A stretch of DNA of 63,025 bases, counting the filler, from Octopus bimaculoides (Eukaryota): assembly GCF_001194135.2 (NCBI RefSeq). It is 5 parts of 5 records of this genome, joined end to end, with 100 filler letters (N's around TTAATTAATTAA, not from the genome) between each part and the next. Parts side by side here need not be neighbours in the genome. Positions count along the whole stretch, not along the records: positions 48,021 to 54,912 come from NC_069000.1; 4 more parts are not named here. One strand, written 5' to 3'. The notes below the pieces were generated by a model. That model was given only the letters and a program-made list of their open reading frames with translations. It had not been told where the DNA came from and did not search any database. Positions 48,021 to 54,912 of the stretch are shown here, one piece after another. Position 1 is the stretch's first letter. Every line of letters begins with the position of its first letter. The translations under genes were made by a program, and so were the position numbers.

Positions 48021-48148
48021 GGGGGGGGGGTCGATAAATCAAGTACCAGTTACGCACTGAGGTCGATGTAATCGACTTAATCCCTTTGACTGTCCTTGTT
48101 TGTCCCCCTCTCTATGTTTAGCCCCCTTGTGGGCAATAAAGAATTAAG
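48021..48148 (+). mobile_element. SINE family 2, 3' part
   Basis: GGTCGATAAATCAAGTACCAGTTACGCACTG...GCAATAAAGAA matches the tail of 41388-41625. Confidence 0.8.
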
Positions 48149-48359
48149 AAACTGTGCACTAGTCTGTTCTGCACACCACATACACACGCACGCACGCACG
48201 CACGCACGCACGCACACACGCGGGTGTATGAGTGTATGTGTGTATGTATGTACGTGCGTGTGCATGTGTCTTTGCGCGTGTGTACGTGATTAGTTCAGAC
48301 CAGTTAAAAGATGATACGTGATGAAGTGTGTGCGTTGTCTTGTGGTTGGCTTCTATAAA

Positions 48360-48368
48360 ATGGTAAGT
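48360..48368 (+). other. Candidate donor of an upstream non-coding exon of the beta-lactamase-like gene
   Basis: ATG|GTAAGT about 1.2 kb upstream of the 49585 acceptor, in the same assembly block. Confidence 0.3.
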
Positions 48369-49071
48369 ATGTCTGGAAGGATGAATGCGATTATGAATGC
48401 TTGTGTGTGGGTGGTTGTGCACATTACAGTCATTATTAAAATGTGTACATGAACGTTCGGGAGGCTAATTGTGCGTGTGTGTGTTTGTGTGTGTGTGTGT
48501 GTGTGCATATCGTGTTCGTGTTTCAGTAAAGTTTTGCGTGTGTGTATGTGTATAACATGCAAGTGTCTCTGTGTCTATATGTGCGTGCGTGTATATCTAT
48601 ATCTGTGTGAGTGTATGTTGTAAACTTATCAGTTTAAAACTTATCAGTATTCAAGTTTAAAAAAATAAAAAAAGTAAGGCAGGCGTCAATAGAGAAAGAA
48701 AGAGAGTGGGTGGAGAGAGAGAGAGAGAGAGAGTAAGGGGGAAAGGCAAAGGAAAAAAAGTGAAAGAAAGAAAAAAAGACATTGAGTCAGAGAGAGAAAA
48801 GACACAATTGGAGAAAATGCAGATGGAAAAAGAGGAAGAAAACAAAGGAAGAGAAAAATAAAGGGAAGAGACCAATAAAAGAAAGAAAGGAAGAAAGAAT
48901 TAAATGCAAACAAAAAGGAAAAATAGAGAAAGATAGAAAAAGAAAGGACGAAGGTGTTGAAATAGGAATAACTATTTAACTTATTTTTTTATTAATATTT
49001 TTTATTCTTTTACAAATATTTTGTTTAAATCAGATCCTGCCCAATATATTTTCACACACACAAACACTCAC

Positions 49072-49115
<44 letters not shown>

Positions 49116-49550
49116 GGAAGCACACCCGCACGCACACACACAAACATATGCATGCATATACACGCACGCACGCACAAATCCCCCCCCACACACACACACA
49201 CACGCATACATACATACACTCTCTCACTCCCTCCCTCACGTATATGCATACATGTAGGAAGGTTGTTTGTGGATTAACTGTAATCCCTCGCCTTGTATAT
49301 TACCGGTATTAGTTTATCATTTTAACCACTTCTCACATACCAGTCTTCGAAGCTTTTTTGGGAAGAGAAAAAAAAAACTTAAACACAAAAACAACAAAAC
49401 AAACAAACTTTAAACTCGCATTAAGAATCGATCTCACGACACCGAAAGTACTGAAACAGATATTATACACAAGGAAAGAGGGGGGGAAATTCATTAAATA
49501 TTACACTCCAATAATCTTTGTGGTCTCTCCCACCACCCTAGCACAAATAT

Positions 49551-49585
49551 TACTAACATTACGACGATTCTTCACATTACTTCAG
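49551..49585 (+). other. Branch point plus 3' splice site of an intron upstream of the beta-lactamase-like ATG (exon starts 49586, 87 nt of 5' UTR)
   Basis: Perfect TACTAAC at 49551-57, then a pyrimidine-rich tract and TTCAG| at 49585. Confidence 0.65.
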
Positions 49586-49672
49586 GTTACACATGCTTTA
49601 ACAACAAATATATAATTTATAACCCGAATTTAACTTATTCTTTGCTGCCTGTATGTATATAAGAATAGCAAC

Positions 49673-49974
49673 ATGGATTTTTTCTATAAGTTTATATTTC
49701 TTACTGTTACGTCTGGACTTAGCTGTTGGGGATTTCAACAGTTGACGGAAAGGGATCGCGTTAAGCTGGAAAAGTTTTTAGCCATGTCGGTCCAATGTTC
49801 TGGTGCTCACGCTGCCAGTGTGGCTCTTGTACGTAACACCACCGTACTTTACAGGAATGGTTACGGTCACGGAAGTCCGCCGATCGATAAGAACACAACT
49901 TTCTGTATTGGAGGTTTGACCAAGCTGTTCACAGCCGGCTTAGTATCACAACTTATCGATGCTCACAACAGCAG
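49673..49974 (+). CDS. First coding exon of a secreted beta-lactamase/PBP-fold (serine-hydrolase-like) protein; SxxK motif reads GGLTK
   Basis: Complex-sequence ORF MDFFYKFIFLTVTSGLSCWG-FQQ...LEKFLAMSVQC...SVALVRNTTVLYRNGYG...KNTTFCIGGLTKLFTAGLVSQLI. It has a hydrophobic signal-peptide-like start and follows the family pattern V-x-x-x-G-Y/F-G ... T-x-F-x-I-G-S-x-T-K-x-F-T. It ends at a phase-2 donor AG|GTAAGC (GT at 49975-76). Downstream exons were not identified. Confidence 0.85.
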
Positions 49975-50197
49975 GTAAGCAACGCATTGGCTTTTACACA
50001 CACACACACAGTGTGTGTCTCTCTTTCTTTCTTTCTTCTTTCTTTCTCTATCACAAGCACGCACACACTTGCTCTCTCTCGCTCGCTCTCTGTCTGCCTC
50101 TCTCTCTCTCTATCTCGTTCTCTATCTCTCTCTCGGTCCCCCCTTTCCAAGTATTCTAGCTTTCGTGTTAAATTTCTTACTATTTACCTATCACACT

Positions 50198-50243
<46 letters not shown>

Positions 50244-51093
50244 NNNNNNNNNNNNNNNNNNNNNNNNNNNNNNNNNNNNNNNNNNNNNNNNNNNNNNNNN
50301 NNNNNNNNNNNNNNNNNNNNNNNNNNNNNNNNNNNNNNNNNNNNNNNNNNNNNNNNNNNNNNNNNNNNNNNNNNNNNNNNNNNNNNNNNNNNNNNNNNNN
50401 NNNNNNNNNNNNNNNNNNNNNNNNNNNNNNNNNNNNNNNNNNNNNNNNNNNNNNNNNNNNNNNNNNNNNNNNNNNNNNNNNNNNNNNNNNNNNNNNNNNN
50501 NNNNNNNNNNNNNNNNNNNNNNNNNNNNNNNNNNNNNNNNNNNNNNNNNNNNNNNNNNNNNNNNNNNNNNNNNNNNNNNNNNNNNNNNNNNNNNNNNNNN
50601 NNNNNNNNNNNNNNNNNNNNNNNNNNNNNNNNNNNNNNNNNNNNNNNNNNNNNNNNNNNNNNNNNNNNNNNNNNNNNNNNNNNNNNNNNNNNNNNNNNNN
50701 NNNNNNNNNNNNNNNNNNNNNNNNNNNNNNNNNNNNNNNNNNNNNNNNNNNNNNNNNNNNNNNNNNNNNNNNNNNNNNNNNNNNNNNNNNNNNNNNNNNN
50801 NNNNNNNNNNNNNNNNNNNNNNNNNNNNNNNNNNNNNNNNNNNNNNNNNNNNNNNNNNNNNNNNNNNNNNNNNNNNNNNNNNNNNNNNNNNNNNNNNNNN
50901 NNNNNNNNNNNNNNNNNNNNNNNNNNNNNNNNNNNNNNNNNNNNNNNNNNNNNNNNNNNNNNNNNNNNNNNNNNNNNNNNNNNNNNNNNNNNNNNNNNNN
51001 NNNNNNNNNNNNNNNNNNNNNNNNNNNNNNNNNNNNNNNNNNNNNNNNNNNNNNNNNNNNNNNNNNNNNNNNNNNNNNNNNNNNNNNNNNNNN

Positions 51094-51161
<68 letters not shown>

Positions 51162-51570
51162 CATGCATGTGTATGTATATGTGTATGTGTGTGTGTGTGT
51201 ATGTGCGTGCGTGTATTCATATTGCATCTTGCTTTATAAATAGTATGAAAAGTAACAGAAAATATGTAGCACTCGATGCAGAGCTGTGGAAAATGTATTT
51301 GTACTTATAAAGCTATGCGAGTAAAGTTATCGTATAGATTACCATTGATTTTGCGGTCATGGTCTTCAAAGGTAATGTGTGTGTGTGTGTGTGTGTGTGT
51401 GTACACATACATACGTGCATACATACATATGCATGTGTATGGCTATGTATATTGCACAATGTTATTAGAAATCCAATGTGTATGTAATCTGTACAAGAAA
51501 GCAGTTCATGAGCTAACTTTTTTTAAAGTGAGAAAAAGAAACAAAATTAATGCATTAAGCTACGAATGAA

Positions 51571-51798
51571 AGAAAGATATCTAGACGTTTCGGTCAATTT
51601 GTCTTTCGTCAAGATAGAGCGATGAAGAAAAAGAGAAAGTTTTATTTTCTGATCAAAAGTGTGTTTGTGATTTTTGTTATATATAGAAAGATATCTAGAC
51701 GTTTCGGTCAATTTGTCTTTCGTCAAGATAGGGTGATGAAGAAAAAGAGAAAGTTTTATTTTCTAATCAAAAGTGTGTTTGTGAGTTTTGCTATATAT
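51571..51798. repeat. Two 114-bp tandem copies
   Basis: AGAAAGATATCTAGACGTTTCGG... starts at 51571 and 51685, with a few substitutions between copies. Confidence 0.9.
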
Positions 51799-52984
51799 GG
51801 TTCTAAGAAAATAGTTAAAATGGTTTTAAAACACGATTTTCATTATCCAATTATTTTTCCTCTTTTTTTTTTCTCTTCCTATCTAGCCCAAAGAAGACAT
51901 ATTGTCCAAAACATCNNNNNNNNNNNNNNNNNNNNNNNNNNNNNNNNNNNNNNNNNNNNNNNNNNNNNNNNNNNNNNNNNNNNNNNNNNNNNNNNNNNNN
52001 NNNNNNNNNNNNNNNNNNNNNNNNNNNNNNNNNNNNNNNNNNNNNNNNNNNNNNNNNNNNNNNNNNNNNNNNNNNNNNNNNNNNNNNNNNNNNNNNNNNN
52101 NNNNNNNNNNNNNNNNNNNNNNNNNNNNNNNNNNNNNNNNNNNNNNNNNNNNNNNNNNNNNNNNNNNNNNNNNNNNNNNNNNNNNNNNNNNNNNNNNNNN
52201 NNNNNNNNNNNNNNNNNNNNNNNNNNNNNNNNNNNNNNNNNNNNNNNNNNNNNNNNNNNNNNNNNNNNNNNNNNNNNNNNNNNNNNNNNNNNNNNNNNNN
52301 NNNNNNNNNNNNNNNNNNNNNNNNNNNNNNNNNNNNNNNNNNNNNNNNNNNNNNNNNNNNNNNNNNNNNNNCATAATTTCAATCACATAATGCGGATAAC
52401 TAAAAAAAAAATTCACCCGGATTGGATGTTAGCGTATTGCAGATACCTTCCCAGAAACTCAGTTCGCCCAAATTGTTAATCACCACGATTCACTAAACAC
52501 TTTGTCCAATCCAATGAAAACCCAACCCGATGGAAATCCCCTCTTCGCTCACGTTATTATTGTTGAAATAGGGCAGCTATTTTGAGCAGGTCAAGTCTAC
52601 ATGCGGTGACTTCATCCATGGTCAGCCCTGGTTTAACAGACCTATGATCAAAAATATTCCACCCGGGACCACCCAACAGATATCTGATTTTTTACACAGG
52701 ATTTTTTTGGCACTTTAAAGGAGAAGTGTTTGCTAGGGAAACTATCCTTCACCCTAGATCTAACCCTTCATTCTAGAGCTAGCCCTCATCATATATCTCA
52801 CGTTTTATCGTACTTTAACTTTTCTACCCCGAGCTAACCTTCAACCCTAGATCTAACTTTCCATTGTAGGTCAAACCTTTCATCTTACATGTAACCCTTC
52901 ACACAGCATTTACCCCTTCTAGAAATAATCCTTCAGCCGGAATCTCGACTCTAACCCAATGGGGAAGTCTCTATATTGTCACTT

Positions 52985-53125
52985 GACTAGCTAGAAATAG
53001 CAACTAAATCTTCCTCAAATCACACCCTACTGAATAAAAGTTGATGGTCATGACTGGAACGTCTTCAATCATGGGTCTACTCGATCAGAACTAACACGAA
53101 GCAAAACAACATCAACAACAACAAT
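52985..53125 (+). mobile_element. Fragment of a further interspersed repeat with a (CAA)n tail; related pieces at 30460-30540, 30861-30930 and 52600-52675 (-)
   Basis: GCTAGAAATAGCAAC.AAATC...CAAATCA and GACTGGA...ATCA..GGTCT...ATCAG.ACT.AC...AAACAAC recur at these sites. Confidence 0.5.
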
Positions 53126-53539
53126 AACCCTAACCTAAGTTAATATGTAGGAGATCGTTCGATCTGCCTGTCCAGTTATTTAAACAGTTAGCATACACAC
53201 AAATACGACGGTTCGATGTTGTGGCCTGTCTTAGTTGACAAGTTACAGACTCAGAGTAATTTATCGTTTTATGTTCTTTACGAATAGATAAAAGTTAAAA
53301 TTAACTCTGGCATGATTTAATCTCAAAATGTGAACTGAAAGAACTGAATATTGCAAACTCTTTTCCTCGATATCATAACGATTCTGACAATAGTTGTTAC
53401 CAAATTACTGGTGCGTTAACAGCGTTTCCTTTCAATATATTCTACTACACTACAGAATATATCTATAGGTTCTAGCCTGCACTGTATGTGTACACAGGTA
53501 TAAATACAATATTTTAATAGCCAACTGAACTAATTTCAG

Positions 53540-53601
53540 TCCTTAATCGGGATTTCTTTGGCGACAGAGATACTGACCACAAACTCACTGTTATTAAGGG
53601 T
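53540..53601 (+). CDS. Candidate 62-nt exon, product unknown
   Basis: CTAATTTCAG| acceptor and GGT|GTAAGT donor. It can read LNRDFFGDRDTDHKLTVIKG. It is not phase-compatible as the direct successor of 49673-49974. Confidence 0.25.
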
Positions 53602-53701
53602 GTAAGTAAATTGGATAACTCAATTGGCATGTGTGTGTGCTTATATATATGTATATATATATATATGCGCGTGTGTGTGTATGTATGCGAATGTATATAT
53701 G

Positions 53702-53760
<59 letters not shown>

Positions 53761-54317
53761 ACATATATATATGTACACATATATATATATATATACACAC
53801 ACATACATATATACACACATGTATATACACACATATATATAGATATAGATATATATGTATATATATGTATATGCATACACACACACACGGTCCTTAACAG
53901 TTCGATTAATCAAATTACCGGCGCGCTAAGCGCATTTAGTTTCAATGTTATCCTGCAGGAGTGTAGCGTGGACAGAGCAACTGACACGATTGTCCCAGGC
54001 GCAAAACTCTTTGGGGCGCAAAATTTCAAAACAAAAAATAAAATAGTAATGATTTAAAAAATACGTCATTGCTATGCTTTTATCTACAGATTTTAGCCAA
54101 TCCTGTACCTAAGGTTTTATATACAATATCTTCCTGGATAGAAAAAGGGAGATCCACCGTGTACAAAGATGCACAAATATATTATCACATTGCGATAATA
54201 TTGGAAAAACAAAAATCGAAAATATATTTTAAACAAAATGAAAAAATATTAGAGAAATTGAAGATATAAAAAGGTGAAACAAATCTTCTAATAAATGAAA
54301 ATATTGATTTCAAATTT

Positions 54318-54530
54318 TGGCTCAAGGCCGGAAATTTCGGGGTAGGGGGTAAGTATATGAATGGTACTTATTTTATCGACCTCAGTGCACAACTGGTACT
54401 TATTTTATCGACTCCGAAAGGATGAAAGGCAACGTCGACGTTGGCGGATGTTCAACGCAGAACGTAAAGACAGACGGAATGTCGCTAAGCATTTTGTCCG
54501 GCGTGTTAACGATTTTGCTAGCTCGCCGCT
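54318..54530 (-). mobile_element. SINE family 2
   Basis: Reverse complement head and core match. Confidence 0.8.
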
Positions 54531-54558
54531 TTAATAAACGAGGATATCAAAAAAGAGA

Positions 54559-54900
54559 CTTAAGATATTTCAGTATTTGAAGATATATAAAGCCCTGAAA
54601 ATATTCTGAAAAACTGGGTACATTAACACTGGGTACATTAACACTGGGTACATTAACACTGGGTACATTTGTTTGTTTTTATCATTAGATAAAAACAAAC
54701 AAACCGAAATAGTTTTTTAAAAGTAGGAAAAATAAAAAAAAAAGAAACTTAAGATATTTCAGTATTTGAAGATATATAAAGTCCTGAAAATATTTTGAAA
54801 AACTGGATACATTAACATTGGGTACATTTGTTTGTTTTTATCATTAGATAAAAACAAACAAACCAAAATAGTTTTTTTAAAGTAGAAATATAAAAAAAAA
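54559..54900. repeat. Tandem duplication (189 + about 155 bp) with internal 15-bp VNTR and a perfect 16-bp hairpin
   Basis: CTTAAGATATTTCAG at 54559 and 54748. ACTGGGTACATTAAC occurs about 4 times in copy 1 and about 2 times in copy 2. TTTGTTTGTTTTTATC-ATTA-GATAAAAACAAACAAA is in both copies. Confidence 0.9.
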
Positions 54901-54912
54901 GTTTTTTTAGAA

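What the first reader, a model, noticed from the sequence alone, without database searches (positions are those of the whole stretch)
49673..49974. Secreted beta-lactamase/PBP-fold protein with the catalytic serine replaced by glycine (probable pseudoenzyme)
Seen: a signal-peptide-like N-terminus, a spliceosomal gene structure (TACTAAC branch point and acceptor upstream, AG|GTAAGC donor) and the motif FCIG-G-LT-K-LFT. The nucleophile position is codon GGT (49913-15). Established: SxxK serine is the acylating nucleophile of beta-lactamase/PBP/DD-peptidase-fold enzymes, and molluscs carry secreted members of this bacterial-type fold, for example the oyster shell-matrix protein gigasin-6. Inference: this copy cannot acylate substrate and may be a binding, decoy or structural protein, for example a peptidoglycan or small-molecule binder in mucus or glands. 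GGT is one A-to-G transition from Ser AGT, the same change ADAR recoding would make, so paralogues or relatives might toggle activity by editing at this site. That last idea is speculative.
Basis: partly seen in the sequence, partly recalled or inferred. Interest (0 to 1): 0.7.

Follow-up and report, generated by a model that had tools for sequence, protein, structure and literature searches.

The report
Octopus dead beta-lactamase-fold protein, exon 1
This is the first coding exon of an octopus gene for a surface or secreted protein that keeps the bacterial penicillin-binding/beta-lactamase fold but has lost its catalytic serine and tyrosine. It is a conserved non-enzyme of the mollusc gigasin-6-like family, so it is real but belongs to a kind already known.

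Summary
Window 49673-49974 (+) is an ATG-started 302-nt exon ending at AG|GTAAGC. It encodes a signal-peptide-like N-terminus and FCIG-G-LTK-LFT, with GGT at 49913-15. The exon alone passes Pfam PF00144 (28.5 bits, cutoff 27). The full gene model (P0001, 352 aa) scores 99 bits and the Octopus sinensis orthologue LOC115221601 (589 aa, 88% identical) 110.6 bits.

Every alignment puts Gly81 on the SxxK serine. The YxN tyrosine is also lost (Lys175). Lys84 is kept, and so is His-Ser-Gly in the orthologue.

Gly is hard-wired, with different codons in different lineages: GGT (two Octopus), GGC (Argonauta), GGA (a 50%-identical cephalopod-clade transcript). The 6-exon ORF is intact although synonymous sites are saturated.

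The gene sits in a clade with 100% bootstrap support, together with Haliotis and Patella proteins that each lack at least two catalytic residues. Canonical SLTK/YSN/HSG paralogues lie outside it. Oyster gigasin-6, already called probably inactive in the literature, also reads Gly at this site.

The ADAR toggle idea fails for this gene. The protein also has a C-terminal hydrophobic tail, so it may be tethered rather than freely secreted.

Verdict: a correct reading and a new member of a known kind, of modest interest.

The parts
49673..49974 (+). Coding exon 1 (100 codons plus 2 nt, phase 2) of a 6-coding-exon beta-lactamase-related gene. It covers the signal peptide, helix alpha1, the first beta-strands and the start of the helix that normally carries SxxK.
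   Evidence: ORF. PF00144 hit. 100% match to gene model P0001 residues 1-100. Orthologous 302-nt exon 1 in O. sinensis (L001 10001-10302) and Argonauta (L006 3001-3302).
49673..49732 (+). Predicted signal peptide, residues 1 to about 20 (MDFFYKFIFLTVTSGLSCWG). The cleavage site is inferred, not predicted with a dedicated tool.
   Evidence: Hydrophobic core FIFLTVTSGLSC has mean Kyte-Doolittle 1.75, with small residues at -1/-3 (G20/C18). In the AlphaFold model it is a detached helix 2-16 followed by low pLDDT at 17-20. The same feature is present in the orthologues.
49913..49915 (+). Codon 81, GGT (Gly), at the position of the acylating serine of SxxK.
   Evidence: It aligns to the Ser of IGSITK (2qmi), IGSVSK (AmpC 2qz6) and IGSLSK (3wrt), and to the Ser of canonical mollusc and bacterial homologues.
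49922..49924 (+). Codon 84, AAG (Lys), the retained lysine of the SxxK motif.
   Evidence: Sequence GGAGGTTTGACCAAGCTG = GGLTKL. It is nearly invariant in alignment A2.
49975..49980 (+). 5' splice donor GTAAGC of intron 1.
   Evidence: It is identical (GTAAGCAACG) in O. sinensis. Exact exon boundaries were reconstructed.
49975..54912 (+). Start of intron 1. It is repeat-rich, has two assembly gaps, and runs off the piece.
   Evidence: Intron 1 is 56 kb in O. sinensis and 46 kb in Argonauta. The piece is collinear with O. sinensis L001 10303-13301. No lactamase-like frame was found downstream.
49552..49585 (+). Putative branch point (TACTAAC, 49552-49558), pyrimidine tract and AG acceptor. Its use is unverified.
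   Evidence: Conserved in O. sinensis as TACTAAT...CTTCAG. No transcript evidence.
49586..49672 (+). Putative 5' UTR part of the exon.
   Evidence: 86 of 87 bases are identical to O. sinensis, against 90.7% for 49400-49585 and 92.1% for the CDS.

Best explanation
The finding is exon 1 of a spliced octopus gene. The species is most likely Octopus bimaculoides (my own inference). The orthologue in O. sinensis is LOC115221601.

The gene encodes a protein of about 590 residues that enters the secretory pathway. It consists of a signal peptide, a PBP/beta-lactamase (MEROPS S12-type) domain, a beta-rich C-terminal domain and a terminal hydrophobic tail.

The fold is kept, but the acyl-enzyme machinery is broken at two of its key positions:
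- Ser to Gly81 in SxxK.
- Tyr to Lys175 in YxN.

The protein therefore cannot work as a serine hydrolase or transpeptidase. It is a conserved pseudoenzyme that acts, by inference, through binding or as a structural or surface component outside the cell.

Shown: the gene structure, family, fold, the substitutions, their age and conservation, and the intact ORF under long-term constraint. Inferred: signal-peptide cleavage, GPI or tail anchoring, lack of activity, and any ligand.
For: - Family: PF00144 scores 28.5 bits for the exon alone, 99 bits for P0001 and 110.6 bits for P0042.
- Fold: the best solved relative is Pab87 (2qmi), E 2.5e-16. That alignment pairs Gly81 with Ser, Lys175 with the YxN Tyr, and HSG with HSG. 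The AlphaFold model has pLDDT 81.4 and pTM 0.84, with helix 80-98 starting at the motif. Foldseek returns Pab87, IS11, SurE, FmtA-like, R61, LACTB and AmpC.
- Gly is old and selected: the codon is GGT (window), GGT (O. sinensis), GGC (Argonauta) and GGA (P0002).
- The ORF is maintained: six coding exons with GT-AG borders in O. sinensis and Argonauta translate exactly to the 589- and 618-aa proteins. Between them pS = 0.744 (saturated) and pN = 0.177, so omega is roughly 0.1 or less.
- Expression of a relative: P0002 occurs as intronless contigs of about 2.1 kb in four sequencing runs, which means spliced mRNA.
- Phylogeny: the clade of cephalopods, Haliotis P0058 and Patella P0008/59 has 100% bootstrap support and every member lacks at least 2 catalytic residues. 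Canonical SLTK/YSN/HSG paralogues, including a Patella one, lie outside it.
- Extracellular hallmarks: four conserved Cys, N-glycosylation sequons and a C-terminal hydrophobic tail.
- Precedent: oyster gigasin-6 is a shell-matrix glycoprotein and settlement cue that is described as probably an inactive lactamase relative. Its sequence in the supplement reads GG-ISA at the motif.
Against: - No transcript, protein or activity data exist for this gene in this species.
- The only model of it (P0001) is truncated after exon 4 and reads into the intron, so the third motif and the C-terminus are seen only in orthologues.
- Over the 100 codons available, window versus O. sinensis gives dN 0.079, dS 0.103 and omega 0.77. 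That allows relaxed constraint or fast adaptive change on the short term.
- Lys84 and His342-Ser-Gly are retained, so some non-canonical chemistry cannot be excluded.
- Signal peptide and GPI or tail anchor are read by eye and hydropathy, not by a dedicated predictor.
Confidence: 0.85

Rival explanations
1. The protein is still an enzyme. It would use another nucleophile or a water-based mechanism in the old pocket, for example via retained Lys84, His342 or Ser176, or the new Lys175.
For: Lys84, Asn177 and His342-Ser-Gly are retained in the octopods. The segment 57-88 around the motif is invariant between the two Octopus species.
Against: The residues at the former catalytic positions differ across the clade: G/D/S, K/Q, K/E/H/Y/Q, N/D and H/Q. 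That is not what a conserved alternative mechanism predicts. Even within cephalopods the Tyr position is K, E or H. I know of no S12-fold enzyme without the Ser nucleophile (own knowledge).
Confidence: 0.07
2. The copy is a decaying gene or unprocessed pseudogene in this species. The Gly would then be just one of many neutral changes.
For: Exon 1 shows omega of about 0.77 against O. sinensis, with 15 codons changing the amino acid and 4 silent. The only model for this species is truncated at 352 aa.
Against: Exon 1 is an intact ORF with a conserved start, donor and length. The Gly and the whole 6-exon ORF are kept in O. sinensis, Argonauta and P0002 across saturated synonymous divergence. The truncation of P0001 is a read-through into intron 4 in a gap-ridden assembly, not a lesion in a coding exon. 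The replacements avoid the structural core at residues 57-88.
Confidence: 0.05
3. The G at 49913 is a sequencing or assembly error, or catalytic activity is toggled by A-to-I editing at this codon.
For: GGT is one transition from AGT. The assembly around the exon is poor, with two N gaps.
Against: The same GGT is found in an independent O. sinensis assembly. Argonauta has GGC and P0002 transcripts have GGA, which is one step from Arg, not Ser. ADAR cannot turn a genomic G into A (established knowledge). The YxN Tyr is missing as well.
Confidence: 0.02

Closest known systems
Gigasin-6 (Crassostrea gigas shell-matrix glycoprotein; P86789, XP_011449647/8) and 'gigasin-6-like' mollusc proteins
   Same: It is a mollusc secretory-pathway protein of about 560-600 aa with a signal peptide and a PF00144 domain followed by a C-terminal extension. 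It has non-catalytic roles (shell matrix, larval settlement cue) and is described as probably an inactive lactamase relative. As read from the paper's supplement, its motif is LGLGG-ISA-LFA, so it also has Gly at the nucleophile. NCBI names the Haliotis member of the octopus clade 'gigasin-6-like'.
   Different: It is not the orthologue. In the NJ tree gigasin-6 is a separate long branch outside the 100%-supported cephalopod and gastropod clade. Gigasin-6 has also lost the Lys (Ala) and the HxG motif (T-A-D) but keeps the Tyr, whereas the octopus protein keeps Lys and HSG and loses the Tyr. Octopus has no external shell. The gigasin-6 sequence used here was machine-read from a PDF and has small errors.
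Pab87 / 'CubicO' peptidases (PDB 2qmi) and other two-domain S12 enzymes (IS11 esterase 7spn, SurE 6ksu, Lip3 9sn1)
   Same: It is the best sequence match (E 2.5e-16) and the best fold match (Foldseek E 1e-22). The layout is the same: a PBP/beta-lactamase domain followed by a beta-rich C-terminal domain. The nearest non-animal sequences carry PF00144 plus PF11954 (DUF3471).
   Different: Those proteins are active prokaryotic serine hydrolases with intact SxxK, YxN and HxG. They share only 15-19% identity with the octopus protein. They have no eukaryotic signal peptide or C-terminal hydrophobic tail.
Canonical mollusc 'protein flp-like' / beta-lactamase-related paralogues (Patella P0005/P0060, Dreissena P0036, Mya P0017/P0065)
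   Same: They share the overall architecture, the conserved Cys in FCIG and the C-terminal hydrophobic tail. They belong to the same animal clade (94% bootstrap). This corresponds to MolluscDB orthogroup OG0000159, with 167 proteins in 23 species.
   Different: They keep SLTK, Y(S/N)N and H(S/T)G and so look catalytically competent. They are 24-27% identical to the octopus protein, against 31-33% for the degenerate gastropod members.
LACTB (mitochondrial serine beta-lactamase-like protein of animals)
   Same: It is an animal protein with the same fold, and it appears among the Foldseek hits (7v21, 7ulw).
   Different: LACTB is an active, filament-forming mitochondrial protease with an intact catalytic Ser (own knowledge). 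It ranks below the bacterial two-domain enzymes. The octopus protein has a secretory signal, not a mitochondrial one.

Membership tests
Pfam PF00144 Beta-lactamase / MEROPS S12 fold (PBP, class C beta-lactamase, DD-peptidase, family VIII esterase) | Profile score above the curated threshold | tested here: met
   The exon alone scores 28.5 bits against a cutoff of 27. P0001 scores 99 bits, P0042 110.6 bits and P0068 102.7 bits.
Pfam PF00144 Beta-lactamase / MEROPS S12 fold | Three-dimensional fold | tested here: met
   The AlphaFold model of the orthologue has pLDDT 81.4 and pTM 0.84. Foldseek hits with probability 1.00 include 2qmi, 4gdn (TM 0.82-0.83 on the target), R61 1ikg/3pte, AmpC and LACTB. 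The model is of P0042, not of the window's own truncated product.
Catalytically competent S12 serine hydrolase | Acylating Ser of SxxK | tested here: not met
   Gly81 (GGT, 49913-15) aligns to the Ser.
Catalytically competent S12 serine hydrolase | Lys of SxxK | tested here: met
   Lys84 (AAG, 49922-24).
Catalytically competent S12 serine hydrolase | Tyr (and Asn) of YxN | tested here: not met
   KSN is present in P0001 and P0042, with Lys175 at the Tyr position. Argonauta has ESN and P0002 has HSD. This motif lies in exon 3, outside the piece, and is read from the gene model.
Catalytically competent S12 serine hydrolase | H/K-x-G motif on beta3 | tested here: inconclusive
   O. sinensis has H342-S-G, and Argonauta and P0002 have HGG. 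This species' model stops before the motif.
Gigasin-6 family (mollusc secreted beta-lactamase-related proteins) | Mollusc protein with an N-terminal signal peptide, a PF00144 domain and a C-terminal extension | tested here: met
   The sources name its relatives gigasin-6-like or GIGA6-like.
Gigasin-6 family (mollusc secreted beta-lactamase-related proteins) | Orthology to C. gigas gigasin-6 itself | tested here: not met
   In the NJ tree gigasin-6 falls outside the 100%-supported clade that holds the octopus gene. The gigasin-6 sequence is OCR-derived and the tree is a simple distance tree.
Gigasin-6 family (mollusc secreted beta-lactamase-related proteins) | Presence in shell or other extracellular matrix | not testable with these tools
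   This needs proteomics or in situ data.
GPI-anchored / tail-anchored surface protein | C-terminal hydrophobic segment with no cytoplasmic tail | tested here: inconclusive
   The tail FILLLVCVLISI... has mean Kyte-Doolittle 3.5 at the extreme C-terminus of P0042, and P0068 and P0002 are similar. No GPI predictor is available, and the C-terminus of this species' protein was not seen.

The most novel reading that the evidence does not exclude
The octopus gene may belong to an ancient clade of catalytically dead, surface-tethered PBP-fold proteins that predates the cephalopod-gastropod split. In this reading the D-peptide or peptidoglycan-binding cleft has been re-used as a receptor or decoy for bacterial cell-wall fragments or other small ligands. 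That would make it a mollusc pattern-recognition module, analogous to the non-catalytic PGRPs. The fast-evolving surface (short-term omega about 0.5-0.8) would reflect host-microbe conflict.
Probability: 0.1. Interest if true: 0.6.

Novelty: new member of a known kind. Interest (0 to 1): 0.3.

Why it matters
The finding shows that a bacterial-type penicillin-binding fold survives in cephalopods as a conserved non-enzyme. It also shows that the mollusc beta-lactamase-related family, which is large (167 proteins in 23 species in MolluscDB), has lost its catalytic residues more than once: in oyster gigasin-6 and in the cephalopod and gastropod clade described here.

This is useful for annotation, because these genes should not be called beta-lactamases or peptidases. 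It also gives a clean case for studying how pseudoenzymes evolve.

It does not open a new kind of biology. The gene is already annotated as uncharacterised in O. sinensis and Argonauta, and inactivity has already been suggested for gigasin-6.

Tried and rejected
- The word-indexed protein search with the exon alone found nothing. The exhaustive representative search was needed to find P0001 and its relatives.
- The profile search with alignment A1 was swamped by bacterial CubicO peptidases. It added only the Argonauta orthologue.
- I looked for further exons in the piece (six-frame segments) and found none. This is expected, because intron 1 is 56 kb in O. sinensis.
- Pfam scans of the longer open frames in the intron gave nothing. 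Rfam and tRNA scans of the piece were empty.
- Literature searches for a cephalopod beta-lactamase HGT, for a mollusc pseudoenzyme, and for the SRR accessions of the P0002 transcripts gave nothing relevant. The species and tissue of P0002 remain unknown.
- The first Biopython bootstrap run timed out and was replaced by a numpy distance/NJ bootstrap.
- The first exon-boundary script failed because a BLAST HSP ran into an intron. It was fixed.
- Rejected readings: sequencing error, ADAR toggle and dead pseudogene (see the rival explanations). A TATA-like TATATAAG lies 7-14 nt upstream of the ATG (49659-49666), which is too close to serve as this gene's core promoter.

Full report
**What is in the sequence**

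The piece (48021-54912) is AT-rich, microsatellite-laden eukaryotic DNA with two assembly gaps, 50244-51093 and 51916-52371. On the + strand an ORF starts with ATG at 49673 and runs for 100 codons plus two bases to 49974. There it meets AG|GTAAGC.

The peptide is MDFFYKFIFLTVTSGLSCWGFQQLTERDRVKLEKFLAMSVQCSGAHAASVALVRNTTVLYRNGYGHGSPPIDKNTTFCIGGLTKLFTAGLVSQLIDAHNS. Codon 81 is GGT at 49913-49915 and codon 84 (Lys) is AAG at 49922-49924. TACTAAC (49552-58) and cttcag|G (to 49585) lie upstream.

**Is it more than chance, and is it a real exon?**

- The 101-residue translation alone passes Pfam's curated threshold for PF00144 Beta-lactamase: 28.5 bits against 27, E 1.1e-6, profile positions 13-70.
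- Weak hits to solved structures (Pab87 2qmi, an AmpC 2qz6, 3wrt) all align IG-G-LTK with IG-S-xxK.
- An exhaustive search of 1.8 billion representative proteins found P0001. This is a 352-aa gene model (UniParc UPI00071E29DB) identical to the exon over residues 1-100, so it is this gene's own annotation.
- A search with P0001 found Octopus sinensis LOC115221601 (P0042, 589 aa, 88% identical). A profile search added the Argonauta hians orthologue (P0068, 618 aa, 69%).
- I fetched both genomic loci and reconstructed the exons exactly. Each has six coding exons with GT-AG borders that translate to the deposited proteins. Exon 1 is 302 nt in all three species.
- The donor GTAAGCAACG is identical in the window and in O. 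sinensis.
- Intron 1 is 56 kb in O. sinensis and 46 kb in Argonauta. That explains why the piece holds no further exon.
- P0001 ends in ...GLYRVYDMKKQKDQLLRFFTN, which is a read-through into intron 4. The model of this species is cut short by the fragmented assembly, not by a lesion in a coding exon.

**Family and fold**

Full-length proteins score 99-119 bits on PF00144. The best solved relative by sequence is the Pyrococcus Pab87 'PBP-related beta-lactamase' (2qmi, E 2.5e-16). It is followed by alkaline D-peptidase, the IS11 esterase and an FmtA-like protein.

An AlphaFold model of P0042, built on a 33-sequence alignment, has mean pLDDT 81.4 and pTM 0.84. Its features are:
- a detached N-terminal helix (2-16);
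- an alpha/beta domain in which helix 80-98 begins exactly at the motif;
- a beta-rich C-terminal domain (strands 445-545);
- a terminal helix.

Foldseek against the PDB returns the two-domain S12 proteins first (2qmi, 7spn, 9sn1, SurE). After them come FmtA-like, R61 DD-peptidase, LACTB, AmpC, ClbP and a family VIII esterase, all at probability 1.00.

**State of the catalytic centre**

| Protein | Motif 1 (SxxK) | Motif 2 (YxN) | Motif 3 (HxG) |
|---|---|---|---|
| Octopus (P0001 / P0042) | G-L-T-K | K-S-N | H-S-G (P0042 only; P0001 stops before it) |
| Argonauta (P0068) | G-L-T-K | E-S-N | H-G-G |
| P0002 | G-L-T-K | H-S-D | H-G-G |
| Haliotis P0058 | D-I-T-Q | Y-N-N | Q-D-G |
| Patella P0008/59 | S-G-T-Q | Q-S-D | Q-G-G |
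| Other mollusc paralogues (Patella P0005/60, Dreissena P0036, Mya P0017/65) and bacterial homologues | S-x-T-K | Y-(S/N)-N | H-x-G |

The table comes from the alignments. The phmmer alignment to 2qmi independently pairs Gly81 with Ser, Lys175 with Tyr, and HSG with HSG. The octopus protein therefore lacks both the nucleophile and the general-base tyrosine. By established knowledge of this fold, that removes acylation.

**Age and selection**

The Gly codon differs between lineages:

| Source | Gly codon |
|---|---|
| Window | GGT |
| O. sinensis | GGT |
| Argonauta | GGC |
| P0002 | GGA |
| P0029 (anonymous eukaryotic contig) | GGA |

This shows that Gly is kept at the protein level while the third codon position drifts.

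- Between O. sinensis and Argonauta, synonymous sites are saturated (pS 0.744) while pN is 0.177. Long-term omega is therefore roughly 0.1 or lower, and the figure is imprecise because of the saturation.
- Between the window and O. sinensis only exon 1 can be compared. Fifteen codons change the amino acid and four are silent, which gives dN 0.079, dS 0.103 and omega 0.77 on 100 codons. The replacements cluster at residues 13-56 and 89-98. Residues 57-88, which hold the strands and the motif helix start, are invariant.
- My reading is a constrained core with a fast-changing surface. Recent relaxation cannot be excluded on so few sites.
- P0002 (604 aa, 50% identical) occurs as intronless contigs of about 2.1 kb in four sequencing runs (SRR27666069/70/71/83). 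These are spliced mRNAs, so a Gly-bearing member is expressed. Its species is unknown.

**Phylogenetic placement**

I built a neighbour-joining tree with 200 bootstraps on about 540 columns.
- The cephalopod sequences group with Haliotis P0058 and Patella P0008/59 at 100%.
- The canonical-motif paralogues, including a Patella one, form a separate group (91%).
- All the animal sequences together have 94% support.

The duplication that produced this lineage therefore predates the cephalopod-gastropod split. Every sampled member has lost at least two catalytic residues, but different ones. That pattern fits early loss of catalysis followed by drift at the now unconstrained positions.

**Comparison with what is known**

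- NCBI names relatives 'gigasin-6-like', 'GIGA6-like' and 'protein flp-like'.
- Gigasin-6 of the Pacific oyster is a shell-matrix sialoglycoprotein of 63-64 kDa and a component of the larval settlement cue.
- Two papers state that it may be an inactive form of a lactamase-related protein (PMC5854119; supplement of PMC9456362).
- The gigasin-6 sequence printed in that supplement is machine-read and has small errors. It reads ...LGLGG-ISA-LFAN......FYYNELMY... and ...ETADDMHG.... That means Gly at the nucleophile, Ala at the Lys, Tyr kept and HxG lost.
- In my tree gigasin-6 is a separate long branch, so its Gly is probably an independent loss.
- MolluscDB lists a beta-lactamase-related orthogroup of 167 proteins in all 23 species among shell-matrix-related families.

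Dead members of this family are thus already a recognised idea. This octopus gene is a further member, and it is not the orthologue of gigasin-6.

**Location in the cell**

- The N-terminus has the n/h/c layout of a signal peptide.
- Four Cys are conserved among the cephalopod sequences, and N-glycosylation sequons are present.
- The full-length orthologues end in a strongly hydrophobic stretch of 17-20 residues with nothing after it. Most mollusc relatives do as well.
- That is the look of a GPI-attachment signal or a tail anchor. This is an inference only, and it means 'secreted' may really be 'surface-tethered'.

**The ADAR idea**

The idea does not apply here.
- The base is a genomic G, and ADAR changes A, not G.
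- The codon is GGA in P0002, which is one step from Arg, not Ser.
- The Tyr is missing as well.

I could not search octopus genomes for canonical paralogues, so editing of a Ser codon elsewhere in the family remains untested.

**Upstream structure**

The putative acceptor is conserved in O. sinensis, with TACTAAT in place of TACTAAC. The 87 bp between it and the ATG are 98.9% identical, against 90.7% for the 186 bp before it and 92.1% for the CDS. This fits an exon starting near 49586 with a constrained 5' UTR. Argonauta is not alignable there, and no transcript was available.

**Verdict**

The main interpretation, a secretory-pathway PBP-fold pseudoenzyme, is supported and extended by a second lost residue, by conservation across cephalopods and by a degenerate clade shared with gastropods. 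The editing speculation is not supported. The finding is a new member of a known kind. The function beyond 'non-catalytic' remains an inference.

Noticed in passing
window 48027-48150 (+) and 54370-54535 (opposite orientation): This is an interspersed repeat of about 120-165 bp. It has more than 20 copies at 80-91% identity, on both strands, in the 118-kb O. sinensis locus L001. It is probably a SINE-like element. No tRNA or Rfam match was found in the piece.
   Followed up: partly
window 51571-51798: A 114-bp unit is present in two tandem copies (95% match). The orthologous O. sinensis intron appears to have one copy, because both window copies map to L001 11629-11800.
   Followed up: partly
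window 51856-53238: About 1.4 kb of intron 1, including the N gap 51916-52371, has no counterpart in O. sinensis, where the flanks map to L001 11800 and 11804. It is a lineage-specific insertion or deletion. Its open frames have no Pfam match.
   Followed up: partly
window 54549-54900: There is a direct duplication of about 190 bp (54549-54741 and 54738-54900, 91-95% identical). It contains a perfect 15-bp minisatellite, ACTGGGTACATTAAC x3.8, at 54613-54669.
   Followed up: no
window 49586-49672: The 87 bp before the ATG are 98.9% identical to O. sinensis. That is more conserved than the coding exon (92.1%) or the sequence further upstream (90.7%), and it suggests a constrained 5' UTR or proximal regulatory element.
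   Followed up: partly
window 50201-50243 and 51094-51161: The first assembly gap is bounded by (TC)n on one side and (TA)n on the other. The gap probably sits in a long microsatellite tract that the assembler could not cross.
   Followed up: no
protein P0001 (gene model of this locus), residues 336-352: The public gene model for this species ends by reading into intron 4 (…GLYR|VYDMKKQKDQLLRFFTN). It lacks exons 5-6, which hold the HxG motif, the C-terminal domain and the hydrophobic tail. The annotation is truncated.
   Followed up: yes
L007 871-1137 (ENA ERZ26168041, contig ctg193118): An anonymous 42-kb eukaryotic contig in a metagenome assembly carries a similar first exon with FGIG-G-LTK (Gly codon GGA) and a GT donor. 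This is another Gly-bearing relative from an unidentified animal.
   Followed up: partly
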